A DNA stretch of 62,334 nucleotides, filler included, from Choristocarpus tenellus KU-1152 (lineage: Eukaryota; Protista; Phaeophyceae), in NCBI GenBank assembly GCA_964200185.2. It is 7 parts of 7 records of this genome, joined end to end, with 100 filler letters (N's around TTAATTAATTAA, not from the genome) between each part and the next. Parts side by side here need not be neighbours in the genome. Positions count along the whole stretch, not along the records: positions 30,635 to 41,997 come from CAXNAD020002367.1; 6 more parts are not named here. One strand, given 5' to 3'. The translations under genes and the position numbers were made by a program. Positions within the stretch are counted from its first letter, which is position 1; each line of letters starts with the position of its first letter. Shown piece after piece: positions 3,301 through 41,997 of this stretch. Below the pieces are notes generated by a model. It was not told the DNA's origin. It saw only the letters and a program-made list of their open reading frames with translations, and searched no databases.

Positions 3301-4516
3301 AGCTAAGGAGGCAAGAGCCAAGACAGCAGAGACCAAGCCAAAGGAAATGGTGAAGGATAAAGAGCATGAGGGAGAGGAACCCAAAAAAACTGAGTCAGGA
3401 GATTCCTCCGATATAGTCAGTAAAAATGATAGCAACAAAGATCTCATTGGTAAACACTCCAGAGAGGATGAAACAGAGGACAGCCTTGAAAGTGACGAAG
3501 AAGAGCCGCCCATGTACTTGCAAGCTCGAAACGTCTTCCTCAACCCTGAGGTGGGAGAGGTAACTTAGTATCTTGTATCCATAGGAAAGTCAACTACTGC
3601 AGGACAGGAAATAAGTATACATTTCCCCATACCTTAGTACTCAAATTCGTATGTGCAAATGTTGGTGGAATGTTAGTGGCAACATTCTAATAATCCTCAT
3701 TCATGTTGTATAAATGTCTCAGGTGTCATCACCCAGTGAGTGCAAACTGAAGTGGACTGACCCTGATGAAGCTGGACTGCTCAAGTTTCTTGTAGAGGAG
3801 AAAGGGTAAGTCAGTTCTTTGTTGTAGTGGAGAGGGTCATTAATCTCTAAGCAGTGTTTTTGTTCACCATGTCTCCTAAACCATCGCTGGCAGATTCAAT
3901 GCAGAGCGGGTGGCATCAGGCATTCTGAAGCTCAAAGATGCTCGCAAGAATACATCACAGAAGCGCATGGACAGGTGAGAAAGTGTGTCATGTTTTCAAC
4001 ACTGTTCAGAACTATGGTTATCTCTATCAATTGAATACTCTAAGATTAAGGTTAGTATCTGAGGTCAATAGTCTTAAAAACCAAAAGGTTTAACCAGTCA
4101 AACATGTGTACATTGTTGTTGAGCATCCCAGGTATTACATCATATAGATGCATTGCATCTCAAGAGTAAAGATGAGTTATTATTGTTTCAGCATGCATGT
4201 AGTCTGCACATTTAGTGTAGAAAATATGTCAACAACTCTATTCAGGCAGTCCTTTGTTTAGTAGGGACATGCTTGTAAATTGCATTCATTGAATTATCTT
4301 GTCACATCTCAAGAGTTGTTCTGAATTGTATTGATGCCACAAGTAGTTCTGAGTCCACCCACTCCTCATTCAGAATCTTTTTTTGTGCTTTGATTTTTTC
4401 TGCCTTGAAGCTTCTTCAGCACAGTTCCCAACCCAAATGCGGGTGCCAAGAGAGCTTCTACTAAAGGAAAGGTTGTCTCGGGTGGGAACAAAGGGAAGGG
4501 AAAGGGGAGAAGGTAG
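371..4516 (+). CDS. FEN1: Flap endonuclease 1 (XPG/RAD2 family), complete, 10 exons, about 461 aa
   Basis: Exons 371-499, 626-685, 795-905, 1003-1176, 1316-1492, 2896-3009, 3200-3550, 3723-3805, 3894-3974, 4411-4516 splice in frame. Motifs: [56 protein letters not shown]3[20 protein letters not shown] box QKRMDSFF, basic C-terminal tail. Confidence 0.97.
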
Positions 4517-30634: not shown

Positions 30635-32175
30635 AGAGAGCAAAGGTTACTCCCACGCCTTTTCGTTTTTCCTTAAGTAGTATTTGTCAATGGATATGGC
30701 AGTATATGTTACAATTTCTAGATGAAGAAGAGAATGTGTAGATAACTCTAATCTTTGTACATTTTTTTAGTATTGAATATTCTTTTTTTTCATCTAGCCT
30801 CAAATTTTATTCATAGAAACGATACATTTTAGTATTCAAAAATGTAAATAAGTAACTGAAGATGTGATAAATGGAAATAATAAAATTTCGAACTACTTTG
30901 TGCCATAGTCTGACTGAACTTTCTTTGATATATTTTGATAGAAGTTATCTTCAGTATTAACGTGTGACCTAAACCGTATATGTCGCATATGATTTGATTC
31001 TACTATTACAAAGTGAAATGGAGAAGTGTAATAGAACATTTGCATTAGGCTGGTTCTACCTTTGGCATGCTACTGGTTAACATAAAATCTGTGTCAGAAA
31101 GCCAGTGGTATTTTTTTCGTCCACTTTTTTTCAGTGGCCCCTTCATTTTCAATAATCTTGTAATACAAGATACAGAGAGTATCCTAAATTTGTTGATGAA
31201 GTAATAACGATATGAACACAGCCTGACATGAAGTTTTTTTAATTTGGTTATATTTTGTTAATGTTGCACTACATGAAATCTACGCCTTAACTCTACCCCA
31301 CACAAGGTTTTTCACAAGTGGTATGTTCAAAAAATTCCATTTCTATGCTGATCTTATGTATTCTAGGAACTTTTTTTTTGTGTTACATAAAATATTAAGA
31401 ATCGATACAACCAGTTTCACGGATGAGATCAACCATCAAGATGAGCTAGTTGTACCATTTTTGTCTTATCTCTTTTTCTTTTATTTAAAGCTTGTACCAT
31501 GATTTTTTTATTTCAATATATACCAATCATTCAACCACAAATTTGTAATTTTACCAAATGAGAGGGGTGAAAGTTTAGAATTAACTTCAGTTATATGTTT
31601 CACCTCACTGCTTTCTATACCCACCCTATTTAAATTAGCTTGAAAGTACATGATGTCCGTAACATGATTGAACACAATATCAAGGAACAAGAGGATACCG
31701 ATGATAAAGATGATATTTATTTGCACACTATTCTCTACCAGTACAAGAATGTCGATCACAGATCCAAAACAAAAAATATGTATTTTTGTTGTCTCCAAAC
31801 TAACCAACCCTAACCCTACTGAACTACCTATCCCCATCAGTTTTTATGAGATGGATATTCTGCCATAAATTGGAAAAGGTCTGCTCTCTGTCCTTGTTAT
31901 TTGATAAAATTTATAGTGAACAACAATTACGGTACAGCCCTGACACCATCACATGACAACTCTACCTTAATTTTACCTACCTTTTAAGATCCGTATGTTC
32001 TTTTTAACAGTCTAACATGACAAGACTATGTTACAACACTTTATTTGTATAGTTTTTTACTATAACTACCATGGTCCACCTAACTTTTTGATGCAATAAT
32101 AGTGTTCCTATAGGGTTACCACATAAGCATTGGTTTGTCCATGAGAAATCTAACACGGGGAGTATATGCAATCAG

Positions 32176-35100
32176 GTCCTATACCGCTGGAGCTTGGTCT
32201 CCTCAGTGCACTCAAATATATTGACCTCAGCGACAACCAGCTTTCCGGTAAGTTTTTTGTAGCTTGATTGTCCACAGTTGGTAGAGAGAAAGATGTGTGT
32301 TGAACACAATGCTCATGTAGGATACTATGTTGATCCTCTTGTAGATGTGAACATTCAGTAAGATTTTAAGCGGCCCTTCTGAGTTGGTATCTGTAAGTTG
32401 TAGAACTTTTTTATTGTGTTGTTTTTATCGTGAGGTACTTGTTATGACTTTGTTCAAGTTCAGGTGAACAAATATGTGGTCTGAAGATACTAGTAGGTAT
32501 TGGTATGTTTATTCTGTGTGATATTTCTACTAATCATGAGATACCCTCTTGCACTGTGTATTATCATACCAGCCCTTTCTATCAAAATTATATCTCGGTG
32601 AAAAACATTTGGCCTTGAAGAGGTTTGAACTTGCAACAATGAGTGCAAGAATTAGTAGAGTGGTTTTTTTTGCCGTTCTGTATTTTTTTATGGGATAATC
32701 GTTAGTCCCTTACTACGAGCTAACTTGTTTATGGTTCTTAATGTAGGGCACTACTGCATTCATTTACCTGAAGGTTGTTCCTGTTAGGGTTATTGGTCTT
32801 CTGTCTCATTTCTGTCATGTTTTTTAACTCTTGTTTACCTTTGTAGTTCTAGATTGCTGAAGCATGGATTTGCCAGTTGTAAGATGTTACTTGGAAATGT
32901 GTTCGTTAGAGTTGGTTTGTGGTTGAGAGTGACCTCTTTACCTTTTCTGAAGAATTATATTGTTCGAATGAGCTTTTCTTCTTAAACCTAGCTGGTGACC
33001 TGTTCTCTCTGGACTCTGGGATCTCTGCGTTGATTGTTTTAACATACACCTACATGGAAGTGTTTATTTTGAATGAATTTAGCTAATATTTTCATTTGCG
33101 CTTGTGGTTCGTGGATCTCCTTGAAATGTCAACCATGCTTGGTGTTCGTGACTTTTCAGGGAAGATTCTTCGTGGCGAGGAGTTGGATCAATGGAGAAGA
33201 GATCTTTTGCACAAGCTTCAGCATAGGCCATATGTAGATGATTGCTTGAAGATATTTGCTGAACTTGAGGAACTCATGGATGGTTGCACTTCAACAAACA
33301 TGCAAAACTCAGTCAAGAACTTGGCCACATTGATGGGTAGAGTTTCTGGATGGGCAAGAGATGATGATGTGAGTGAAATCCTTGCTCTTGAGTACATTCA
33401 TCAAATCTTTCACACCTGTGTGATGCTTATATAGTCTTTTAGTTGAAGAGTAAATTGAGTTACAATGTACCACTTGTTGATGGAGTGAGCAAGAGCATTT
33501 CAAATATTAGGACAAAAACATTTTAAATGTGTTCTTTTCTGAGGTCATGTAAATTTTGTTGTCTTCCATTTATCACACTTTGTTGTAGTTACCTGAACCT
33601 TATCTTTTGTGACTCCTTCCTTAGATCCCTTGTTGATTTGGTTGAGGATTATTCATTTAAGGATTTTGGAAATGTTTAAGTAATCTTGTGCGTCTTCATT
33701 GGAGTTTTAGGGTTAGGGTCCTTGGCATGTTCTTGCAATCCATCTTTTATCATCTATACCCGAAATAGGTGTGTTGCCTTGAGTAGACCAAGGGTCCTTT
33801 CATGAGTGGATCAAATGTTGTCTACAGAAGCCCCACTATATTGCCATGTTTAAATTCTCTTGTAGCCAGAGGCTGCATTGGGTCAGGCCAGACTGTAAGA
33901 AGACAAGCAACTCCTTTTAGGAAGACACTAGTTGGGTAAATAATGCTGGTCTAGCAAAGGTGGACAAGTGAAACCTGCCAGTACTTGATTTCCCATCAGA
34001 AAGAGTAGCCTGTGATAGAAGGCAAGAAACAAATGTAAATACCTGTTTTGACAATGGCTTTGGTTGGGTGGGATGCATCAAACCGAATAAATTAACTCAA
34101 GGGTTATAGCCCACTAGTGTTTACAATACTGTAAACAGCTGTTGTCAATTACCTGCATTAAATAATCAACCTTCTCCTTTGAAAAATGTTTTCTTTGTCT
34201 TTTGTCATACAGACTAGGGAAAGTTCCTTGTGGATGAAGAAGCTAACAGACCTGAAGCGTTACCTCAACATGTTGCTTGAGGTGAGTTTTCTTGGGCTTT
34301 GATGGCAGGATCATTGCTAGAGCTCTCTTTTACTCTCAACACAGTTACTGTAAACCTAACTCTAAGTTATGTTGTCAGGGTTGTGACGACATTGTCTGCG
34401 ATCTATATGACACTAACACCTTTGTGACTGCTTGATATCACTATTGAACCAACCCTGTCCCTCCCCCTTCCTATCCACTTCAAATGGGATTGATATGATT
34501 GATGTTCAGCTCCTACCTACCGGATGAGTTCGTTACCTGCTTTGTTTGGATAATTTTTTGTTAGTTTGTATTGCATGCAGAAATATTCCTAAATTTATAT
34601 CCCTCGCTTAGGAAACCCATAACATTTTCTACAGGGTTACACAAAAAGTATTTATTTGATGTTTTTGGATATCTAATTTTGGTCCTATGCAGTTTATAAT
34701 GGTTAGGACTTGTAAAAATCTCAGTTGGGATTGCAACCATGCTCCAGTTCTATGACGTGTGGAGGGAGCACAATGGGGGGGTCCCTCTAGACCTGTTACT
34801 GGATATGTCCAAAAAGATGGTTGTAGATTTGCGTCATGAACAGAGCACATAAATTCAAGATTTGTTCTGAAAACTATTATTGAAGAACTTCTTTGGAATA
34901 GGTGCAGGCCAGCTCCTCGTATGTCTTGAGTCCTCAATATTGAAGTACCCTTTCCGCTTTTTTTTATTTGAAGGGTGAGTTTATCTTTTAATTGCCAGAG
35001 GTCTTGTAGAGAGTACTTTTTTTTGTGGGGATGATTTATCTTGGCCGTGTAATCTTCACTTTTTTTGGAGAAGTTTTAAGGTAAACTAGCACTACTAAGT

Positions 35101-38100
35101 TGTACATAGTTTACTAGGGAATATTATCTTTTTTCGGCTTTTCGGTTTTTTTATCCATTTTTGAATGTAATTCACTTTTTTTTTGTATGGTGCAAGGGCT
35201 TGCTTCAACATCAGTGAGGCATTTATGATGTGGGTGGTGGCGGGTAAATATTGGTTTCAGTTTAGGTAGCGATATGGTATGAATAAGAACAGTTCATGTG
35301 TAACGTTTGAAATTGTTACACCATTTTGGTATAACTATGTAATGCTCTATAGCAGTGTTGACTTGTGTTCCTTTTTTTTTTTAAGAGTTCCCTATATTTT
35401 CGGGTATCTCGGCTGCCTGCTTGGCTGTATGCTTCCATTTCATACAGTGGGATGTGTGTAATGTATTCCGATCTTGAAGAGGCTTGTGGCATGTTGGTGT
35501 ATTTGTTTCTGCTTTCTTTTGCTTAGCCAAGTGTGAAATACATATATCCAATTGTGATGTCTTTGCGACTGAGAGGATCACTAGTTATAAATTACAGCAT
35601 TAATAATTTAACATGATATTTTAACGCAAGTACAAATCTTGTGTTGTGGGAGTGTTATCATGCCTAGATGTAGCATAGGATTGCCTAACAGAATGAATTC
35701 TTGTTCCCTTACACTATATCATCTCATTTGACACCATCATGCTTGTTGGTTCTGATGTGCCTCACTTGATTCTACCCTTCTCACCCATTCTTCCTTACAG
35801 TGCTATAGCAGATATAATGATGTCACTATCTTGCCCTAGCTGAGAAACCTTCCACCTTAATACTTTGCTGGATCTTGTGCTTTGCAGTTGATTCAATACT
35901 ACCACAGGACTGGCAAATGGGATAATATGGAGAGATCCAACCTGTGGTCATTGAGGCTTCGTCAAGTAGAATCTGCTGCTGAGAGTATTGTTCATCGACT
36001 TGAGGAGGTGGGTCAAGTCCTGACCGTAAACGATTCTCAAAGTGCCTTTGAAGTATCAATAATGGACAGATGTTATGGTGTTGGAGACAACTCTTCTTCT
36101 ATTACTATTAGGAAAGTGACACCTTGCCTTGGACATGCGTTTGAACTGGGCATCCGACTCCTTCGTTACCTGATATTGATGTGTATCCATCTTGTTTGTT
36201 TCCTAATGCTGATGTGTAAGTATTGTTGACCAATGCGGTGCATCACTTTTCCTCTCTACCTGCCAGGAGGAAGGACCAGTGTCAGGTGCTAGGACTACCA
36301 CCTCTACCATGAGTGCAGAGGATTGGCAGCATGCTGACAACATGATTGGACAAGGTGGCTTCGCCCAGGTATAGTACATGGATGTCGATACAGAGGAGTT
36401 GGATAGAGAACTCTGAAAATTTGAGGCAACTCCGACGGAGACTGATGATATGTCTAATTACAAGGCATAATCCATGCCCGTATCAGGTGTATCTTGTAGA
36501 TCACTTTGGTGTTAATGCTGCTGCAAAGGTCATCAATGTGACTGGTGATCACGAGTTGCACGAACGACAGCAGGTCATAGCTAAGGAGTGCAGTACCATG
36601 AAAAATTTGCAGGGATCACCACATGTGCTTACCCTTCTTGGTGATATTGTGCATGATGAAAAGCAGGTGAGGAGTGTATGGTGTGGTTGCTGATCTTGTT
36701 AGGTAAACAACATCGACTTTTTTTGTGAGTTTCTTTGAATGTCAAATGTTCTTCAGCACGAGTCTTGTTTTCTAACATGTCCTTAATTCTTCACTTTGGG
36801 TCATAAACTCTTAGGTATTTTCCTTTGCGTAAAACTATGGAACTAGCAAGAGTTGAATAAAAATGAATTCAGAATTTCTCACATTCATGTGCCTTCCAAT
36901 CATTGTCAATGGTAGTTCATCATGTTCACAGAGTTCTTACCTGGTGGAGACTTGAGGACTTTATTGAATGCAGCTAAGGAAGCTGGGTTCATGGAAGAAA
37001 AACTACAGAAAAGAATCATCACGGATGTTGTGGCTGGCATGAAACACGTACATGCCAATAACGTCATACATGGAGATCTCAAGTCTCTGAACGTAATGAT
37101 GGATAGTCATGGTAGGGCCAAGGTGAGTGCCAAAGCGAATGCCTGAATGTAAAAGATATTGATTTCCTACATGGATGATGAGATAGGAGCATGGCCATGT
37201 TGGAGTATTGTTTATCATTCTTGATACATGGCATTTCTTATTCTTGATATTTACAGAGAACAATAGAACATTAGAAGCTCGGAAGAAGGGGCTCTGAATG
37301 TGTACAGCTGTAGATAGAGAATTATCATACAACCAGGACACGAAAAGACCCTTTTCTAGATGAGGTATGAGTGCTACACAAAATCGAAGCATTTGTATGC
37401 TATTGTGTATTGGAGTACGTGGATGTACTTGATAGTGTATCTGTTCTATCTGTATTTACTGTTATTGGTGTCCTCTCCAAAATACTGGAGACTTTTCGCG
37501 GGCTGGTCTTCAAAGATAAAAGTGAAGACATATCTCATGCAACAAATATATTCATTTTGTATTTTTGGGGTAGAGGCATGTAAATAAGAGCACACCACAT
37601 CAAACCTCAATTAATGAACCTTCATTGTTTTCTCTCTTGTTGATTTCTGGTATTGGTTGTCCACATAGTATATAGCACTCATACACATTCTAAAAGAGTT
37701 TTTTTTCATGTGTTCATTGTATGACAAAAATTCTTTTTGTAAACCTGGACACATTCAGAGTCCCTTAGTTTGAGGTTGCAATCATTATGGAACCCTTACA
37801 AAACCAAGAACACCTTTGTGCTTAAAAAACCTTCAATATTGATAACCACAGCACCTTTCACAGCGTTTGCACTATATCCTTGTTGATTTCACTCTATCGT
37901 GCACAAACCTCCCTTCATCTCATGGGACACAGGAAATATTCTGGAGCTATAGTATGCAATGCTCTATAGTGTGCACTTGGAAATTTTGAATGCTGAATTT
38001 GAGGATTATCTTGATAGATGTTCTAATGTGTCCTGCTGTTGAAGCCCTCCTCCTCCCTCCAGGCACCTCTCTCTGTGTGCGGTGTCTGTTTTTCCTACCT

Positions 38101-39170
38101 TGCACTAGTATCACCTCCTCATCCATTTCTTAGATGCATGAATGACTTCTGTATTGCTTACATCTTGATACGTATCTCACAGATAGCAGATTTTGGACTC
38201 TCACGAGTGGTGACAGTGTTGACTTCAGGTAGCAGTGTCCTGCGCACGGTATGGGGAAGAACCACGGCTTGGGCTGCTCCCGAAGTGTTTCAAGAGGAGA
38301 AGAGTAGCAGAGCTAGCGATGTTTACAGGCAGGAGAAGTACTAGTACAGCAATAATTATTATTTTTCTGATGTTGTTAACAGATAATTTGCAGGTGAAAT
38401 TGAAATGGGTCTGAAGTTGAACTAACTTGATTAAATTGAGACCCAAACTAACCTGAAGGCAACAACGTGGGTAGTGAGTGTCTATGCCATAGGGGCGAAT
38501 GTTTGGCTTCTCCTGCATAGATGTTATATATAGACAGAAGTATAGTAGTAGTTGAGGTTGACTATTGTTCAGTGTTTTGCTCAGGAATCGCTAAAGAAGA
38601 ACTAACAATGTCGATGAGATTGGCTGCGCAGTGGAAATATACAGTTATCACAGTTTTGGTTAGAACTTCAAACACACATAATTGCAGGGCAACAAATGCA
38701 CCACCTAAAAGACCTGTTTTACCTGTAACGTCCCAGCACAATCATGGAATAAGGGACAACTTTTGGGAAAACAACTGAAATGCCGATTTCTTCAATTTGG
38801 TATGGTGTGGATAATTTCATGATTTGTTGAACTGAGGCTATTGTACTGTTGTTACAGTTTGTAACACTCTTTCCACAATTGTGTGATGGATCCTAGATCT
38901 GTGGTCAAGAGATACTATATTTTTGCCTTGTTTTGTACTGGTGAATCCAGCTTTGCTATTGTGTATTGGGAGGTGCTCACACTTGAAGTTCCTTGGAAGG
39001 GTAAAGCTGATAGCGCAATCATGTACAGTGTGGGCATTAAGGAGGAGCGCCCACGGCTGCCTCTGGACACGCCTGCCAAAATCAAAAGGATCATCACCAA
39101 GTGCTGGGCTACAGATCGAAGGAAGCGGCCAACTATTGAGGAGGTGGAGGAGCTGGTAAGGGTCTCATAA
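32176..39170 (+). CDS. LRR + helical domain + TKL-type protein kinase (5'-partial)
   Basis: Exons 32176-32247 (GPIPLELGLLSALKYIDLSDNQLS), 33160-33368, 34213-34281, 35888-36007 (or 36052), 36267-36368, 36487-36666, 36916-37122, 38183-38328, 38951-39170 are phase-compatible. Kinase motifs: IGQGGFAQVY, AAAK, HGDLKSLN, DFG, WAAPE, SDVYSFAIV.WE, CW..D..KRP. Confidence 0.85.
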
Positions 39171-41687
39171 TTTATGAAGTATAATATGTTGCACATCTTC
39201 ACTGCCCAAACAGATTGCATCTACTCTCCCTGAATTCGTAGCCTGGGGGATCATCAACCTTCAGATGATCAACCTTCAGTCAAGTCGGTGGGAATTAAGT
39301 TTTGTTGTCACTGGTGACTTGTCATTAACGGCACAGGTATCCCTATCAGAGTATGCCATGTACGTTAGTTTTATGTTGGTGGGGCCAAGTTTATGCATCA
39401 GAGATGGAAACTGACTGGCTTTAGGAATTCCTTTCTATCTAGGCGACCCTCCTAAATCATAGTGTCAGTTTAGCAGTTCCTCTGTTTTGTGTTATCCTCA
39501 GATACACTACAAAACGTTGATAACCCTCATTTTCAAGTATAAGGTAAGTGTTGCCCTGTTGTATAGGAAGGTCTTTGTTCTGTGCAACTCGAACACAGCT
39601 GTATTTTTTTTGGTTACCTTGTCTGTTTTGTTTCTTCCCTCCTGCCATCCCTATCATCACATATGCAAATAATGGACAGAAAATATGTATCATTTTGAAA
39701 CTAAAGACTAACCTACAGCATTGCATTAAAAATTGAATATTAACTGCAAGCAAGTTACAGTAGCTGATCTACCTACATGTCGTCTTTGTAACCGTTTTTG
39801 TTAATAAAGTGTTGTATACAACGGAATATGCGCATGGACAGGAGTGTCTACTCTTGTTTAGCTTCCAAGATATTGCTTCAGTGGCTACATAATTTCTTGC
39901 TTGCGTTTGTCATTTTTTCTAAGTAGATTGAATTCCTAATGTTATGTTTCTCATTGTGTTCTGCTAATATTTGTCTTACCCTCTTCTTTACTGTCCCTTT
40001 GCACTTGTTACATTACTACTACCTTTGTTGATCTAAATCATTGCCAGCTTGCAATGCCAGATGCAGGGGGGGGATGGCTAAATTGGTTGTTTGGATGATG
40101 CGTGTGATTGAGTTTGGAACAAACACCTGCCACTTGGAAGCACAGTGCAGCTTTTGCTTGAATGTTTTTGGCATAATGAGCTGCACAGGCGTTACACTAG
40201 ATTTTGCACTGTTGGGGCGATCATCATCTCTTCGGTAAACCTTTGAAAGTACCAAATACCGAATTCACAATGTTGGTCAAGGCAGAGACAAGTACATGAG
40301 ACCGTGAGACATGTTCATGGTGTTTTCAGTGGAGGTGTAATTGAAGGGAGATGAGATGTAGCAATTATAGAGGGATATAATGGATTAATTCAGCAAGGAG
40401 TTCAAGGCAGGTTCAAGAGGCGACTCTTGCTCTGACCATACACGATGATCGGCACAGCTGGTAGATGTCTGACATTTGAGAGTGAGGGATGTTTTTTTGA
40501 GGATGGCAAAGACGAGTTGAGATCATTGGAAGTATCCACTGAGTCCATCGACAAGAAACTGGGAATGTTTCTATGCATATGTGGTAGAGCATGTGCTTGG
40601 ATGGGAGGAGTGAGTGTTGTGGTTATCGTCGGGTTGAGTTAGGATCACATTGGTGAGTGGTTTTGTCTTGTGTGTCTGGAGGGTAGAGAGGTCTGTTTGA
40701 ATTCTTCATTGCAGTGATATTTCCCTTTTTTGAAAGTTGAATTGCCATCAAAGTGTCGTACAGTTAGTTGTTTAGTGCTCTAAGGATTACCTACCTTTAT
40801 AAAATAGCACTTTAGGATCAAGACATAATTTTTACTAGCTCACAATACGGAGTGCTATAGGATACCTCTGTGTACGAGTGGTGAACATACAGTTCTGCTA
40901 GAAAGATCTTAGTGGTTGGATGGTTTATTTGAAGTGGTCGAGTGGTGAGCAAAAGGATTAGTTGTAGGGAGTTCAATTGATCTTTTATTGTTAGGGTGTA
41001 TTGCTTTCTTAATGATGAGCGTTACTGACCAATCAATCTCCTTGTTTCTCTATTTTTCACCACTCTGCATGCCAGGATGTACCACACACCCTTTAATTTT
41101 GTTGGATACCCCTCTTTAGAGTTTTGAAAGCCTGTTCGTTTTTATCGTTAGTGTGTATAAAATAAAGATTTAGTTACCAAAGTACACAGTGAGGATAAGT
41201 CATGATCCAGATCTGATAGTGTATTAGACCAAACCAAACAGGACATACTTCTGTTTTGCTGTGTGTTTTTTTTTACATTATTTGGAAAACACACAAGCAA
41301 GCAAGAATGTGCAGTAAACATTCATTTACATTTGTAGAGCACACATTATATACATTCATTGTAGAAATACACACAGTAAATCACTCATCAACATTGTGCA
41401 TTAGACCGATCCAGGGCAAGCAGGGTGAAGGATGTGATGCTTTCTATCTCCAGAAAGGATCATGTCTATGTACACCTTGGGGATCTCCCCCCCACTGTTT
41501 CCATACCAATACACTCTGCCAAAGTGTACAACAATGTAAATACAACAATACAGACATGAAAGACTTCAAGAACAGGCATAAGGTTAAAGTTGAAAAAAAT
41601 AAATAATATGTTAAAAAAAAAAGAGAGGACATGATGTGGGAGACCTCAAAATCCACACCCAAACCTACGCAGCAAATGTCCCTTCTT

Positions 41688-41958
41688 GGGTCATAGTATC
41701 CTAGAGGGGAGATGTTTTGATGAGGTTGTCCATTTGAGGCTATACAAGGTGGTGAAAGATACCCCACTTTGATGCCCGTTTTGGGGCGACTTTCCTTTCA
41801 ATTTGGCTCGGGCAGGGGGGGAGAAAAAGAAGGGACCTTCAGATGAAGATGATAGCACTTACATGAGACAGGTTCAGCCAAATGAAATGAAAATCACGGT
41901 AAGTTCACACAAGCCCCCCAAAGGACGCCTGATAACCCCTCTAGGATACTATGTGCCT
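41688..41958 (+). mobile_element. MITE family E copy 1
   Basis: GGGTCATAGTATCCTAGAGGGG ... CCCCTCTAGGATACTATG; homologous to the reverse complement of 60842-61118. Confidence 0.8.
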
Positions 41959-41997
41959 TTTCACAGACACTCGAATACCCTAAAAGGGCATCCTGCA

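What the first reader, a model, noticed from the sequence alone, without database searches (positions are those of the whole stretch)
32176..39170. LRR - helical bundle - kinase: candidate MLKL-like intracellular immune protein
Seen: after the last LRR and a cap (GEELDQWRRDL) come about 120 aa of amphipathic helices (DDCLKIFAELEELMDG..NSVKNLATLMGRVSGWA..LTDLKRYLNMLLELIQYYHR..LRQVESAAESIVHRLEE), then an intact kinase. There is no transmembrane segment and no Roc GTPase. Established: a four-helix bundle plus kinase is the MLKL cell-death architecture, and brown algal ROCO proteins use shuffled LRR exons. Inference: a sensor (LRR), executioner-like bundle and active kinase fused in one cytosolic protein, an architecture I do not recognise as described.
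Basis: partly seen in the sequence, partly recalled or inferred. Interest (0 to 1): 0.8.

Follow-up and report, generated by a model that had tools for sequence, protein, structure and literature searches.

The report
Brown-alga LRR, MLKL-like bundle, active kinase
This brown-alga gene joins a leucine-rich repeat, a four-helix bundle predicted to resemble the membrane-attacking domain of the cell-death protein MLKL, and an apparently active kinase, with no membrane anchor found; this layout has not been described for brown-alga LRR-kinases, and it still lacks RNA proof.

Summary
The piece is a whole 11.4-kb contig of the brown alga Choristocarpus tenellus. On its + strand lie nine phase-compatible exons:
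- one 72-nt type I LRR exon;
- three exons encoding about 130 aa of helices;
- five exons encoding a TKL kinase with all catalytic motifs.

- **Sequence:** the related helical domain of Ectocarpales LRR receptor kinases repeatedly hits Pfam MLKL_N just under threshold.
- **Membrane anchor:** no transmembrane exon was found between the LRR exon and the bundle, in the target or in a paralogue.

Caveats:
- No RNA evidence could be obtained, so the LRR-to-bundle splice is inferred.
- The annotated model starts inside the first helical exon.
- One donor site is GC where paralogues have GT.
- The brace and the pseudokinase, both defining features of MLKL, are absent.

Brown-algal LRR-kinases are already known. 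The MLKL-like bundle and the anchor-less form appear undescribed. Any death function is speculative.

The parts
32176..32247 (+). Type I LRR exon. 72 nt, phase 1 to 1, encoding (G)PIPLELGLLSALKYIDLSDNQLS(G). It fits GxxPxxLxxxxxLxxLxLxxNxLx.
   Evidence: Splice sites and phase. Weak Pfam LRR_1 hit (E 0.015). Same exon type as in PMC3341825. Paralogue L005 has an intact 72-nt counterpart at 3592-3663.
33160..33368 (+). Exon A. A linker helix (about 33177-33224), then bundle helix alpha1 (about 33228-33278) and alpha2 (about 33294-33347).
   Evidence: Helix limits were carried over from the AF2 model of paralogue P0174 through alignments A1 and A3.
34213..34281 (+). Exon B. First part of bundle helix alpha3 (TRESSLWMKKLTDLKRYLNMLLE).
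   Evidence: The A-B-C junctions are the same in the deposited model P0001.
35888..36007 (+). Exon C. End of alpha3 (to about 35911), a short top helix (35918-35929) and alpha4 (about 35939-35992). An alternative donor lies at 36052/36053.
   Evidence: hhalign of this region against the Ectocarpales helical domain gives P 3.3e-4.
36267..36368 (+). Exon D. An acidic, Ser/Thr-rich linker (EEGPVSGARTTTSTMSAED...), then the glycine loop IGQGGFAQ (36345-36368).
36487..36666 (+). Exon E. Kinase strand beta3 with the lysine of AAAK (36526-36528), and helix alphaC.
   Evidence: Pfam Pkinase on P0001 residues 118-258, E 9.8e-25.
36916..37122 (+). Exon F. Hinge to catalytic loop HGDLKSLN (37069-37092). 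This is a non-RD kinase.
   Evidence: Pfam Pkinase E 1.3e-13. This exon was the query of the exhaustive protein search.
38183..38328 (+). Exon G. DFG (38189-38197), the activation loop and APE. The donor is GC (gcagga).
   Evidence: Paralogues L003, L004 and L005 have gtagga at this site.
38951..39170 (+). Exon H. Kinase subdomains IX-XI, with the stop at 39168-39170. A possible donor (CTG|gtaagg) follows 39146.
   Evidence: Pfam PK_Tyr_Ser-Thr E 4e-10..
40048..40098 (+). Possible alternative last exon (LAMPDAGGGWLNWLFG, then stop), used if the donor after 39146 is active.
   Evidence: Sequence. The second deposited gene model on paralogue L003 ends at the equivalent stop. Inference only.

Best explanation
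This is one copy of a recently amplified, Choristocarpus-specific branch of the brown-algal LRR-kinase family (TKL group, non-RD catalytic loop HGD).

Read across its exons, the protein has:
- a short plant-type LRR module; the N-terminal cap exon lies beyond the contig edge but is seen in a paralogue;
- a linker helix;
- a four-helix bundle of the MLKL_N / HeLo / CC kind;
- a 25-residue acidic, Ser/Thr-rich linker;
- a kinase with all catalytic residues.

No signal peptide or transmembrane segment was found. If the exons are joined as inferred, the protein is cytosolic.

Shown here: the exons, the motifs, the paralogues, the selection that keeps the reading frames open, the predicted bundle and its structural neighbours.

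Inferred mechanism: the bundle is a regulated membrane-binding or oligomerising module, held in check or released by the adjacent kinase and by autophosphorylation of the Ser/Thr linker, with the LRR as the input surface. This would work like MLKL or a plant CC domain. Whether the output is membrane damage and death or only signalling is open.
For: - **Organism and gene model:** contig CAXNAD020002367.1 of C. tenellus; the deposited protein CAM9367333.1 joins exons A-B-C-D-E-F exactly as read here.
- **Relatives:** the nearest full-length relatives by kinase exon F are Ectocarpus kinases with a conserved helical domain before the kinase (52-56% identity).
- **Pfam on the sister domain:** that domain hits Pfam MLKL_N collinearly in many members: P0198 E 7.6e-6 and 25.9 bits against a cut-off of 27; others 2.5e-4 to 1e-3; Rx_N also appears. 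One member carries a precomputed PF22215 hit together with LRR and kinase.
- **Link from target type to that domain:** hhalign P 3.3e-4 over helices 3-4. Shared near-invariant Cys, Tyr, Ser and Arg in alignment A3.
- **Fold:** the AF2 model of paralogue P0174:1-135 has pLDDT 81.6 and pTM 0.77, with four long helices plus a short top helix.
- **Paralogue L005:** it has an LRR N-cap exon homologous to Ectocarpus LRR receptor kinase residues 26-80 (E 1e-10). It also has an intact LRR exon upstream of its exon A.
- **No TM:** no TM-capable exon lies in the LRR-to-A intron of either locus.
- **Selection:** no in-frame stops where 4-8 would be expected by chance; exon indels are multiples of three; Ka/Ks 0.62-0.76.
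Against:
- The deposited models of all paralogues start at a Met inside exon A and omit the LRR exon.
- The target-type helical region has no Pfam, PDB-sequence or Atlas hit of its own.
- An HMM of the Ectocarpales domain scores P0001 only at E 0.029.
- Foldseek finds nothing significant.
- The low-confidence model of the Ectocarpales domain (pLDDT 60.6) gives only generic bundles and no MLKL.
- The target has a GC donor after exon G.
- One paralogue (L004) is frameshifted in exon G.
Confidence: 0.55

Rival explanations
1. The LRR exon is not part of this transcript. The gene starts at or just upstream of exon A and encodes only bundle plus kinase, the plain MLKL-like order, as in Ectocarpus proteins such as P0128. 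The LRR cap and LRR exons upstream are a separate small gene or relics of an ancestral receptor kinase.
For: - Deposited models of four paralogues start inside exon A.
- An in-frame ATG lies upstream of the exon A acceptor in the target (ORF 33096-33434) and in L005.
- Ectocarpus has family members with the helical domain near the N-terminus and no LRR or TM.
- The LRR module would be unusually short: a cap plus one or two repeats.
Against: - In two of three paralogues the first Met within exon A falls after helix alpha1. Yet the frame is open and conserved from the conserved acceptor onward.
- The LRR exon keeps its length, phase, splice sites and LRR scaffold residues in two loci whose flanking introns no longer align.
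- The phases match (1 to 1).
Confidence: 0.25
2. The helical region is an ordinary regulatory or dimerising juxta-kinase bundle. Its resemblance to MLKL is a common four-helix arrangement, not homology, and it has no membrane or death function.
For: - Foldseek and PDB sequence searches are blank.
- The Pfam hits are all below the gathering score.
- The domain occurs in essentially all Ectocarpales receptor kinases examined, which are usually discussed as developmental or signalling receptors (10.1101/2024.02.19.579948).
Against: - MLKL_N is the recurrent best Pfam family for the sister domain, with collinear matches in at least seven members.
- Six MLKL or CC-type entries appear in the top 50 of 48,161 chains, while the generic low-confidence model gives none.
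- The position directly N-terminal of a TKL kinase is the same as in MLKL.
Confidence: 0.3
3. This particular copy is a decaying duplicate (pseudogene or poorly spliced gene) in a family with fast birth and death.
For: - The donor of exon G is GC where three paralogues have GT.
- Paralogue L004 has a 1-nt deletion and a stop in exon G.
- Ka/Ks is 0.62-0.76.
- The copies sit on short contigs that are 77-93% identical, introns and flanks included.
Against: - All nine exons of the target are open, with intact motifs.
- Chance would give 4-8 stops at the observed divergence.
- GC-AG introns can be spliced (general knowledge).
Confidence: 0.15

Closest known systems
Brown-algal LRR-kinases / LRR receptor kinases (Ectocarpus: Cock et al. 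2010 as cited in PMC3268121; Zambounis et al. 2012, PMC3341825; Denoeud et al., 10.1101/2024.02.19.579948)
   Same: - The 72-nt type I LRR exon.
- A TKL, non-RD (HGD) kinase; these proteins give the best full-length matches to kinase exon F.
- A helical domain directly before the kinase.
- An LRR N-cap exon in the paralogue that is homologous to Ectocarpus P0096.
   Different: - No signal peptide, no TM and no 170-residue spacer were found.
- Only a cap plus one or two LRRs, against about six.
- The brace-like segment (…RRQxRLDQLEIP) is replaced by a short acidic, Ser/Thr-rich linker.
- The helical domain has diverged to the limit of detection.
- Zambounis et al. state that no Ectocarpus LRR protein has a coiled-coil motif, so the bundle was not recognised there.
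MLKL of animals and MLKL1-3 of seed plants (4BTF, 6UX8, 6KA4; 10.1101/681015)
   Same: A four-helix bundle with a short top helix sits directly N-terminal of a TKL-type kinase fold. These proteins are the best natural structural neighbours of the paralogue model. The sister domain hits Pfam MLKL_N.
   Different: - The kinase keeps its Lys, HGD, Asn and DFG, so it is not a pseudokinase.
- There is no two-helix brace.
- The bundle is not at the N-terminus if the LRR exon is joined.
- No RIPK3-like partner is known.
- No Pfam hit for the target type itself.
Plant CC-NLRs and helper NLRs (Rx, MLA13, NRG1; CC or CC-R bundle plus LRR sensor)
   Different: - No NB-ARC switch.
- The order is LRR-bundle-kinase rather than bundle-NB-ARC-LRR.
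- A kinase takes the place of the ATPase.
Brown-algal LRR-ROCO GTPases (PMC3341825, PMC11378527)
   Same: The same type I 72-nt LRR exon, and a presumed cytosolic LRR.
   Different: No Roc or COR domain. The space between the LRR exon and the kinase is filled by the helical exons.

Membership tests
Brown-algal LRR-kinase / receptor kinase family | LRRs encoded by 72-nt exons of type I (GxxPxxLxxxxxLxxLxLxxNxLx) or type II | tested here: met
   Exon 32176-32247 is 72 nt, phase 1 to 1, and fits the type I pattern (pattern from PMC3341825).
Brown-algal LRR-kinase / receptor kinase family | Kinase domain closest to those of brown-algal LRR-kinases | tested here: met
   The exhaustive search with exon F gave, as its best single-domain hits, brown-algal proteins (Choristocarpus, Ectocarpus, Scytosiphon, Hapterophycus) at 48-57% identity. 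No tree was built.
Brown-algal LRR-kinase / receptor kinase family | Signal peptide and a single transmembrane helix between the LRRs and the kinase | tested here: not met
   No 19-residue hydropathy window reaches 1.8 in P0001, P0173 or P0174. No TM-capable exon lies in the LRR-to-A intron of L001 or L005. The 5' end of the target is cut by the contig edge, so a signal peptide cannot be excluded for it.
Brown-algal LRR-kinase / receptor kinase family | Conserved helical domain immediately before the kinase | tested here: inconclusive
   hhalign P 3.3e-4 over 53 columns. HMM E 0.029. Shared Cys, Tyr, Ser and Arg columns in A3.
MLKL (animal and plant) | Four-helix-bundle domain (Pfam MLKL_N, PF22215) | tested here: inconclusive
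MLKL (animal and plant) | Two-helix brace between bundle and kinase-like domain | tested here: not met
   About 25 residues of acidic, Ser/Thr-rich linker. Model residues 126-135 have pLDDT below 50 and no helix.
MLKL (animal and plant) | Pseudokinase (catalytic motifs degenerate) | tested here: not met
   AAAK, HGDLKSLN, DFG and APE are all present.
MLKL (animal and plant) | Membrane permeabilisation after phosphorylation by an upstream kinase | not testable with these tools
   Needs an experiment.
ROCO proteins | Roc GTPase and COR domains | tested here: not met
   No GTPase hit in any exon. The deposited paralogue proteins hit only kinase families in Pfam.
Plant RLK/Pelle LRR-RLKs | TM helix and an RLK/Pelle-type kinase | tested here: not met
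   No TM was found. The family kinase (P0096) is closest to CTR1, TAK1, ZAK, RIPK1 and BRAF among solved structures, not to IRAK/Pelle.

The most novel reading that the evidence does not exclude
Brown algae carry a third, independent lineage of MLKL-like proteins in which the HeLo/4HB module is joined to an active kinase and wired directly to an LRR sensor. In Ectocarpales the LRR lies across the membrane, giving 'receptor-MLKLs'. In Choristocarpus all parts are in one cytosolic chain. Ligand binding would release the bundle to attack or remodel membranes, making a single-chain sensor and executioner.
Probability: 0.15. Interest if true: 0.85.

Novelty: new variant of a known kind. Interest (0 to 1): 0.6.

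Why it matters
Four-helix-bundle 'executioner' domains (MLKL, fungal HeLo, plant CC and CC-R) are a recurring end-point of immune cell death in animals, fungi and plants. Finding the same module in stramenopiles would extend its reach to a fourth multicellular lineage. There it would sit next to an active TKL kinase and be coupled to LRRs. It would also recast the brown-algal receptor kinases, so far described as LRR (or beta-propeller) plus TM plus kinase, as carrying a candidate membrane-acting domain. The anchor-less Choristocarpus form, from the earliest-branching brown-algal order, bears on how those receptor kinases arose. It gives concrete constructs to test: the bundle alone, and the bundle with the kinase.

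Tried and rejected
**Searches that found nothing**
- Sequence searches of the helical exons, one at a time, against Pfam, PDB sequences and the ESM Atlas.
- Profiles A1 and A2 against PDB sequences: no MLKL. A single best member against PDB: nothing.
- Foldseek on both models: no match at E 0.001 or better. The Atlas shape search was uninformative.
- Rfam: none. Tandem repeats: one trivial 15-nt pair. Direct repeats: none.
- Paper searches for MLKL with brown alga, Ectocarpus or stramenopile found nothing relevant. Fig. S9 of the Phaeoexplorer preprint is held only as an empty table, and no Choristocarpus entry was found in the stored part of Table S10.

**Weak results**
- The first fold (Ectocarpales domain, 10 sequences) was of low confidence (pLDDT 60.6). 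It gave only generic bundles.

**Readings rejected**
- ROCO: no Roc or COR domain.
- Plant LRR-RLK: no TM, and the kinase type is wrong.
- A hidden TM exon or further LRR exons in the introns: none found.

Exons were searched by reference, one by one. The joined forms used were the deposited proteins P0001 and P0174.
Full report
**What the piece is**

Places 30635-41997 are the whole of contig CAXNAD020002367.1 (11,363 bp) of assembly GCA_964200185.2, Choristocarpus tenellus. This is a brown alga of the early-branching order Discosporangiales (strain details in the supplement of 10.1101/2024.02.19.579948). G+C is 31-46%. There are no Rfam hits and no meaningful tandem or direct repeats.

**Check of the observation**

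Three-frame translation and direct reading of the DNA give nine + strand exons with matching phases. All acceptors are AG. All donors are GT except one GC.

| Exon | Places | Content |
|---|---|---|
| LRR | 32176-32247 | 72 nt, phase 1 to 1 |
| A | 33160-33368 | linker helix, alpha1, alpha2 |
| B | 34213-34281 | first part of alpha3 |
| C | 35888-36007 | end of alpha3, top helix, alpha4 |
| D | 36267-36368 | linker, glycine loop |
| E | 36487-36666 | beta3 lysine, alphaC |
| F | 36916-37122 | hinge to catalytic loop |
| G | 38183-38328 | DFG, activation loop, APE |
| H | 38951-39170 | subdomains IX-XI, stop |

- The LRR exon encodes (G)PIPLELGLLSALKYIDLSDNQLS(G). This is exactly the 'type I' 72-nt LRR exon GxxPxxLxxxxxLxxLxLxxNxLx described for Ectocarpus ROCO and LRR-kinase genes (PMC3341825).
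- Pfam recognises the kinase in exons F, G and H and in the deposited partial protein.
- The motifs GQGGFAQV, AAAK, HGDLKSLN, DFG and APE are intact, so the kinase looks active. It is of the non-RD type.
- Only one LRR exon lies in the piece.

A deposited protein, CAM9367333.1 (P0001, 264 aa), joins A-B-C-D-E-F at the same junctions. It starts at a Met inside exon A and runs into the intron after exon F. It is therefore a partial model, and I cannot tell whether it rests on RNA.

I did not type, search or fold a joined model of my own. Exons were searched one by one by reference, and the joined sequences used are deposited ones.

**Paralogues and selection**

The word search with P0001 found three more C. 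tenellus proteins: P0172 (86% identity), P0173 (71%) and P0174 (65%). The exhaustive search found P0020 (57% in exon F). Each lies on its own short contig, L002-L005.

- The loci are 77-89% identical to the target through exons and introns. With L003 the identity is 93% for 1.6 kb beyond the 3' end, so these are recent segmental copies.
- Exon lengths differ only by multiples of three. The exception is exon G of L004, which has lost one base and runs into a stop.
- Ka/Ks of the target against L003, L004 and L005 is 0.76, 0.62 and 0.75.
- Random substitution at 8% or 17% would give 4.3 or 8.3 in-frame stops, with a chance of none of 1.6% or under 0.05%. None is seen in L003 or L005. The family has therefore been kept open by selection while evolving fast.
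- The target's donor after exon G is GC where three paralogues have GT. This may or may not impair splicing.

**Is the LRR exon part of the gene?**

Indirect evidence in favour:
- The phases match (1 to 1).
- Paralogue L005 has an intact 72-nt LRR exon (3592-3663) about 1.4 kb upstream of its exon A. The scaffold residues are conserved and the exposed positions have changed, although the flanking introns no longer align.
- 2.1 kb further upstream, L005 has an exon homologous to the LRR N-cap of the Ectocarpus LRR receptor kinase P0096 (residues 26-80, 35% identity, E 1e-10). The equivalent exon of the target would lie beyond the contig's left edge.
- In two of three paralogues the first Met of exon A falls after helix alpha1. 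Yet the frame is open and conserved from the conserved acceptor.

Evidence against:
- All deposited models omit the LRR exon.
- In-frame ATGs exist just upstream of the acceptor.

On a membrane anchor: no exon able to encode a TM helix lies between the LRR exon and exon A in either locus. A possible start (ATGATG... at L005 1071) is followed by no hydrophobic stretch.

**The helical region**

On their own, the helical exons hit nothing in Pfam, PDB sequences or the Atlas.

*The sister domain in Ectocarpales.* The nearest full-length relatives by kinase are Ectocarpus proteins: CBN73941.1 (P0096: signal peptide, six LRRs, TM, spacer, helical domain, kinase) and CBJ48525.1.
- They share a roughly 190-residue helical domain before the kinase. 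It is found in about 40 proteins collected here. Some carry an LRR ectodomain and a TM; others have neither.
- That domain hits Pfam MLKL_N (PF22215) again and again, collinearly and just below the gathering score of 27 bits. P0198 gives E 7.6e-6 (25.9 bits). P0096 gives 2.8e-4, P0194 2.5e-4, P0192 4e-4 and P0197 1e-3. The best of ten domain segments gives 5.4e-5.
- Rx_N is a weaker hit. P0198 also carries a precomputed PF22215 hit beside LRR and kinase.

*The link to the target type.* This link is weaker.
- hhalign gives P 3.3e-4 over 53 columns covering helices 3-4.
- An HMM of the Ectocarpales domain gives E 0.029.
- In the merged alignment A3 a Cys, a Tyr, a Ser and an Arg are nearly invariant across both groups.

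*Folds.*
- The Ectocarpales domain with 10 sequences folded poorly (pLDDT 60.6). It gave only generic bundles in Foldseek and in the exhaustive comparison.
- Paralogue P0174:1-135 covers the complete helical region. It is 70% identical to P0001:1-118 and 51% identical to exon A of the target in alignment A1. Folded with the 27-row alignment A3, it gave pLDDT 81.6 and pTM 0.77. The helices are 4-33, 39-56, 64-94, 97-100 and 104-121: a four-helix bundle with a short top helix.
- Foldseek was blank, as is common for all-helical models.
- VIA-align against 48,161 representative chains put two designed proteins first, then mouse MLKL. The MLKL and CC-type matches were:

|---|---|---|---|
| 4btf_A | mouse MLKL | 10.1 | rmsd 3.0, 96 residues, model 17-126 on chain 2-117 |
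| 6ka4 | Arabidopsis MLKL3 | 9.5 | rmsd 2.7, 99 residues |
| 6ux8 | human MLKL N-domain | 8.7 | |
| 4m70 | Rx-CC | 8.3 | |
| 9fyc | MLA13 | 7.5 | |
| 7l7v | NRG1 CC-R | 7.3 | |

**What it is not**

- Not a ROCO protein: no Roc or COR domain.
- Not a plant RLK/Pelle kinase. The family kinase is closest to CTR1, TAK1, ZAK, RIPK1 and BRAF among solved structures.
- Not an MLKL in the strict sense. The kinase is catalytically equipped. There is no brace, only about 25 acidic, Ser/Thr-rich residues that are disordered in the model. The bundle is also not N-terminal if the LRR exon is joined.

**Known and new**

- Brown-algal LRR receptor kinases were reported with the Ectocarpus genome and re-analysed later (PMC3268121; 10.1101/2024.02.19.579948).
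- Zambounis et al. listed 15 Ectocarpus LRR-kinases as possible defence genes. They stated that no Ectocarpus LRR protein has a coiled-coil motif (PMC3341825).
- Full-text searches for MLKL or HeLo with brown algae, Ectocarpus or stramenopiles found nothing relevant.
- The gene family is therefore known. The MLKL_N-like bundle in it, and the form without a membrane anchor in Choristocarpus, appear to be undescribed.

**Verdict**

- Best reading (confidence 0.55): a fast-evolving, probably cytosolic LRR, four-helix-bundle, active-kinase protein of the brown-algal LRR-kinase family, whose bundle is a remote relative of MLKL_N.
- The mechanism is inferred by analogy: a kinase-controlled membrane-binding or oligomerising module.
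- A true executioner role has a probability of about 0.15.
- Main rivals:
  - the LRR exon is not spliced in (0.25);
  - the bundle is generic and merely regulatory (0.3; this overlaps with the best reading on architecture);
  - this copy is decaying (0.15).

Noticed in passing
P0096 residues 423-612 and about 40 related proteins: The Ectocarpales LRR receptor kinases share a roughly 190-residue helical domain between the TM spacer and the kinase. So do relatives without an LRR or TM, such as P0128, P0188 and P0192. This domain repeatedly hits Pfam MLKL_N just below threshold. I found no paper that mentions it.
   Followed up: partly
L004 5505-5649 (paralogue of exon G): This paralogue has lost one base in the DFG exon (145 nt against 146 nt). 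The frame runs into a stop (VADLDSQTWLQC*), so this copy looks like a pseudogene or an assembly error.
   Followed up: partly
window 37270-37376 and 37673-37782: An imperfect inverted repeat lies inside the intron between exons F and G. The two arms are about 110 nt each, 73-74% complementary, and 296 nt apart. It also shows up as reversed matches to paralogues L003, L004 and L005. It may be a small foldback element.
   Followed up: no
window 39872-41489 against L003 4985-6601: The duplication unit extends at least 2.3 kb beyond the stop codon at 93% identity. That is higher than within the gene (89%).
   Followed up: no
L005 1071-1086 and 1258-1457: A possible first coding exon (ATGATGGATGGAGTGG|gt) is followed by the LRR N-cap exon. 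No hydrophobic signal sequence is visible. This suggests a cytosolic LRR in the paralogue.
   Followed up: partly
P0155, P0158 (ENA metagenome proteins): These are proteins of unknown organism with animal-type LRR_8 repeats, a TM helix, the same helical domain and a kinase. The family therefore reaches beyond the named brown algae in the databases.
   Followed up: no
L004 606-871 (paralogue of exon A): The segment between the LRR junction and helix alpha1 carries a 57-nt in-frame insertion rich in Gln, Glu and Leu (QLEQESQLELESQLQQELQ...). This linker helix is therefore variable in length among copies.
   Followed up: no
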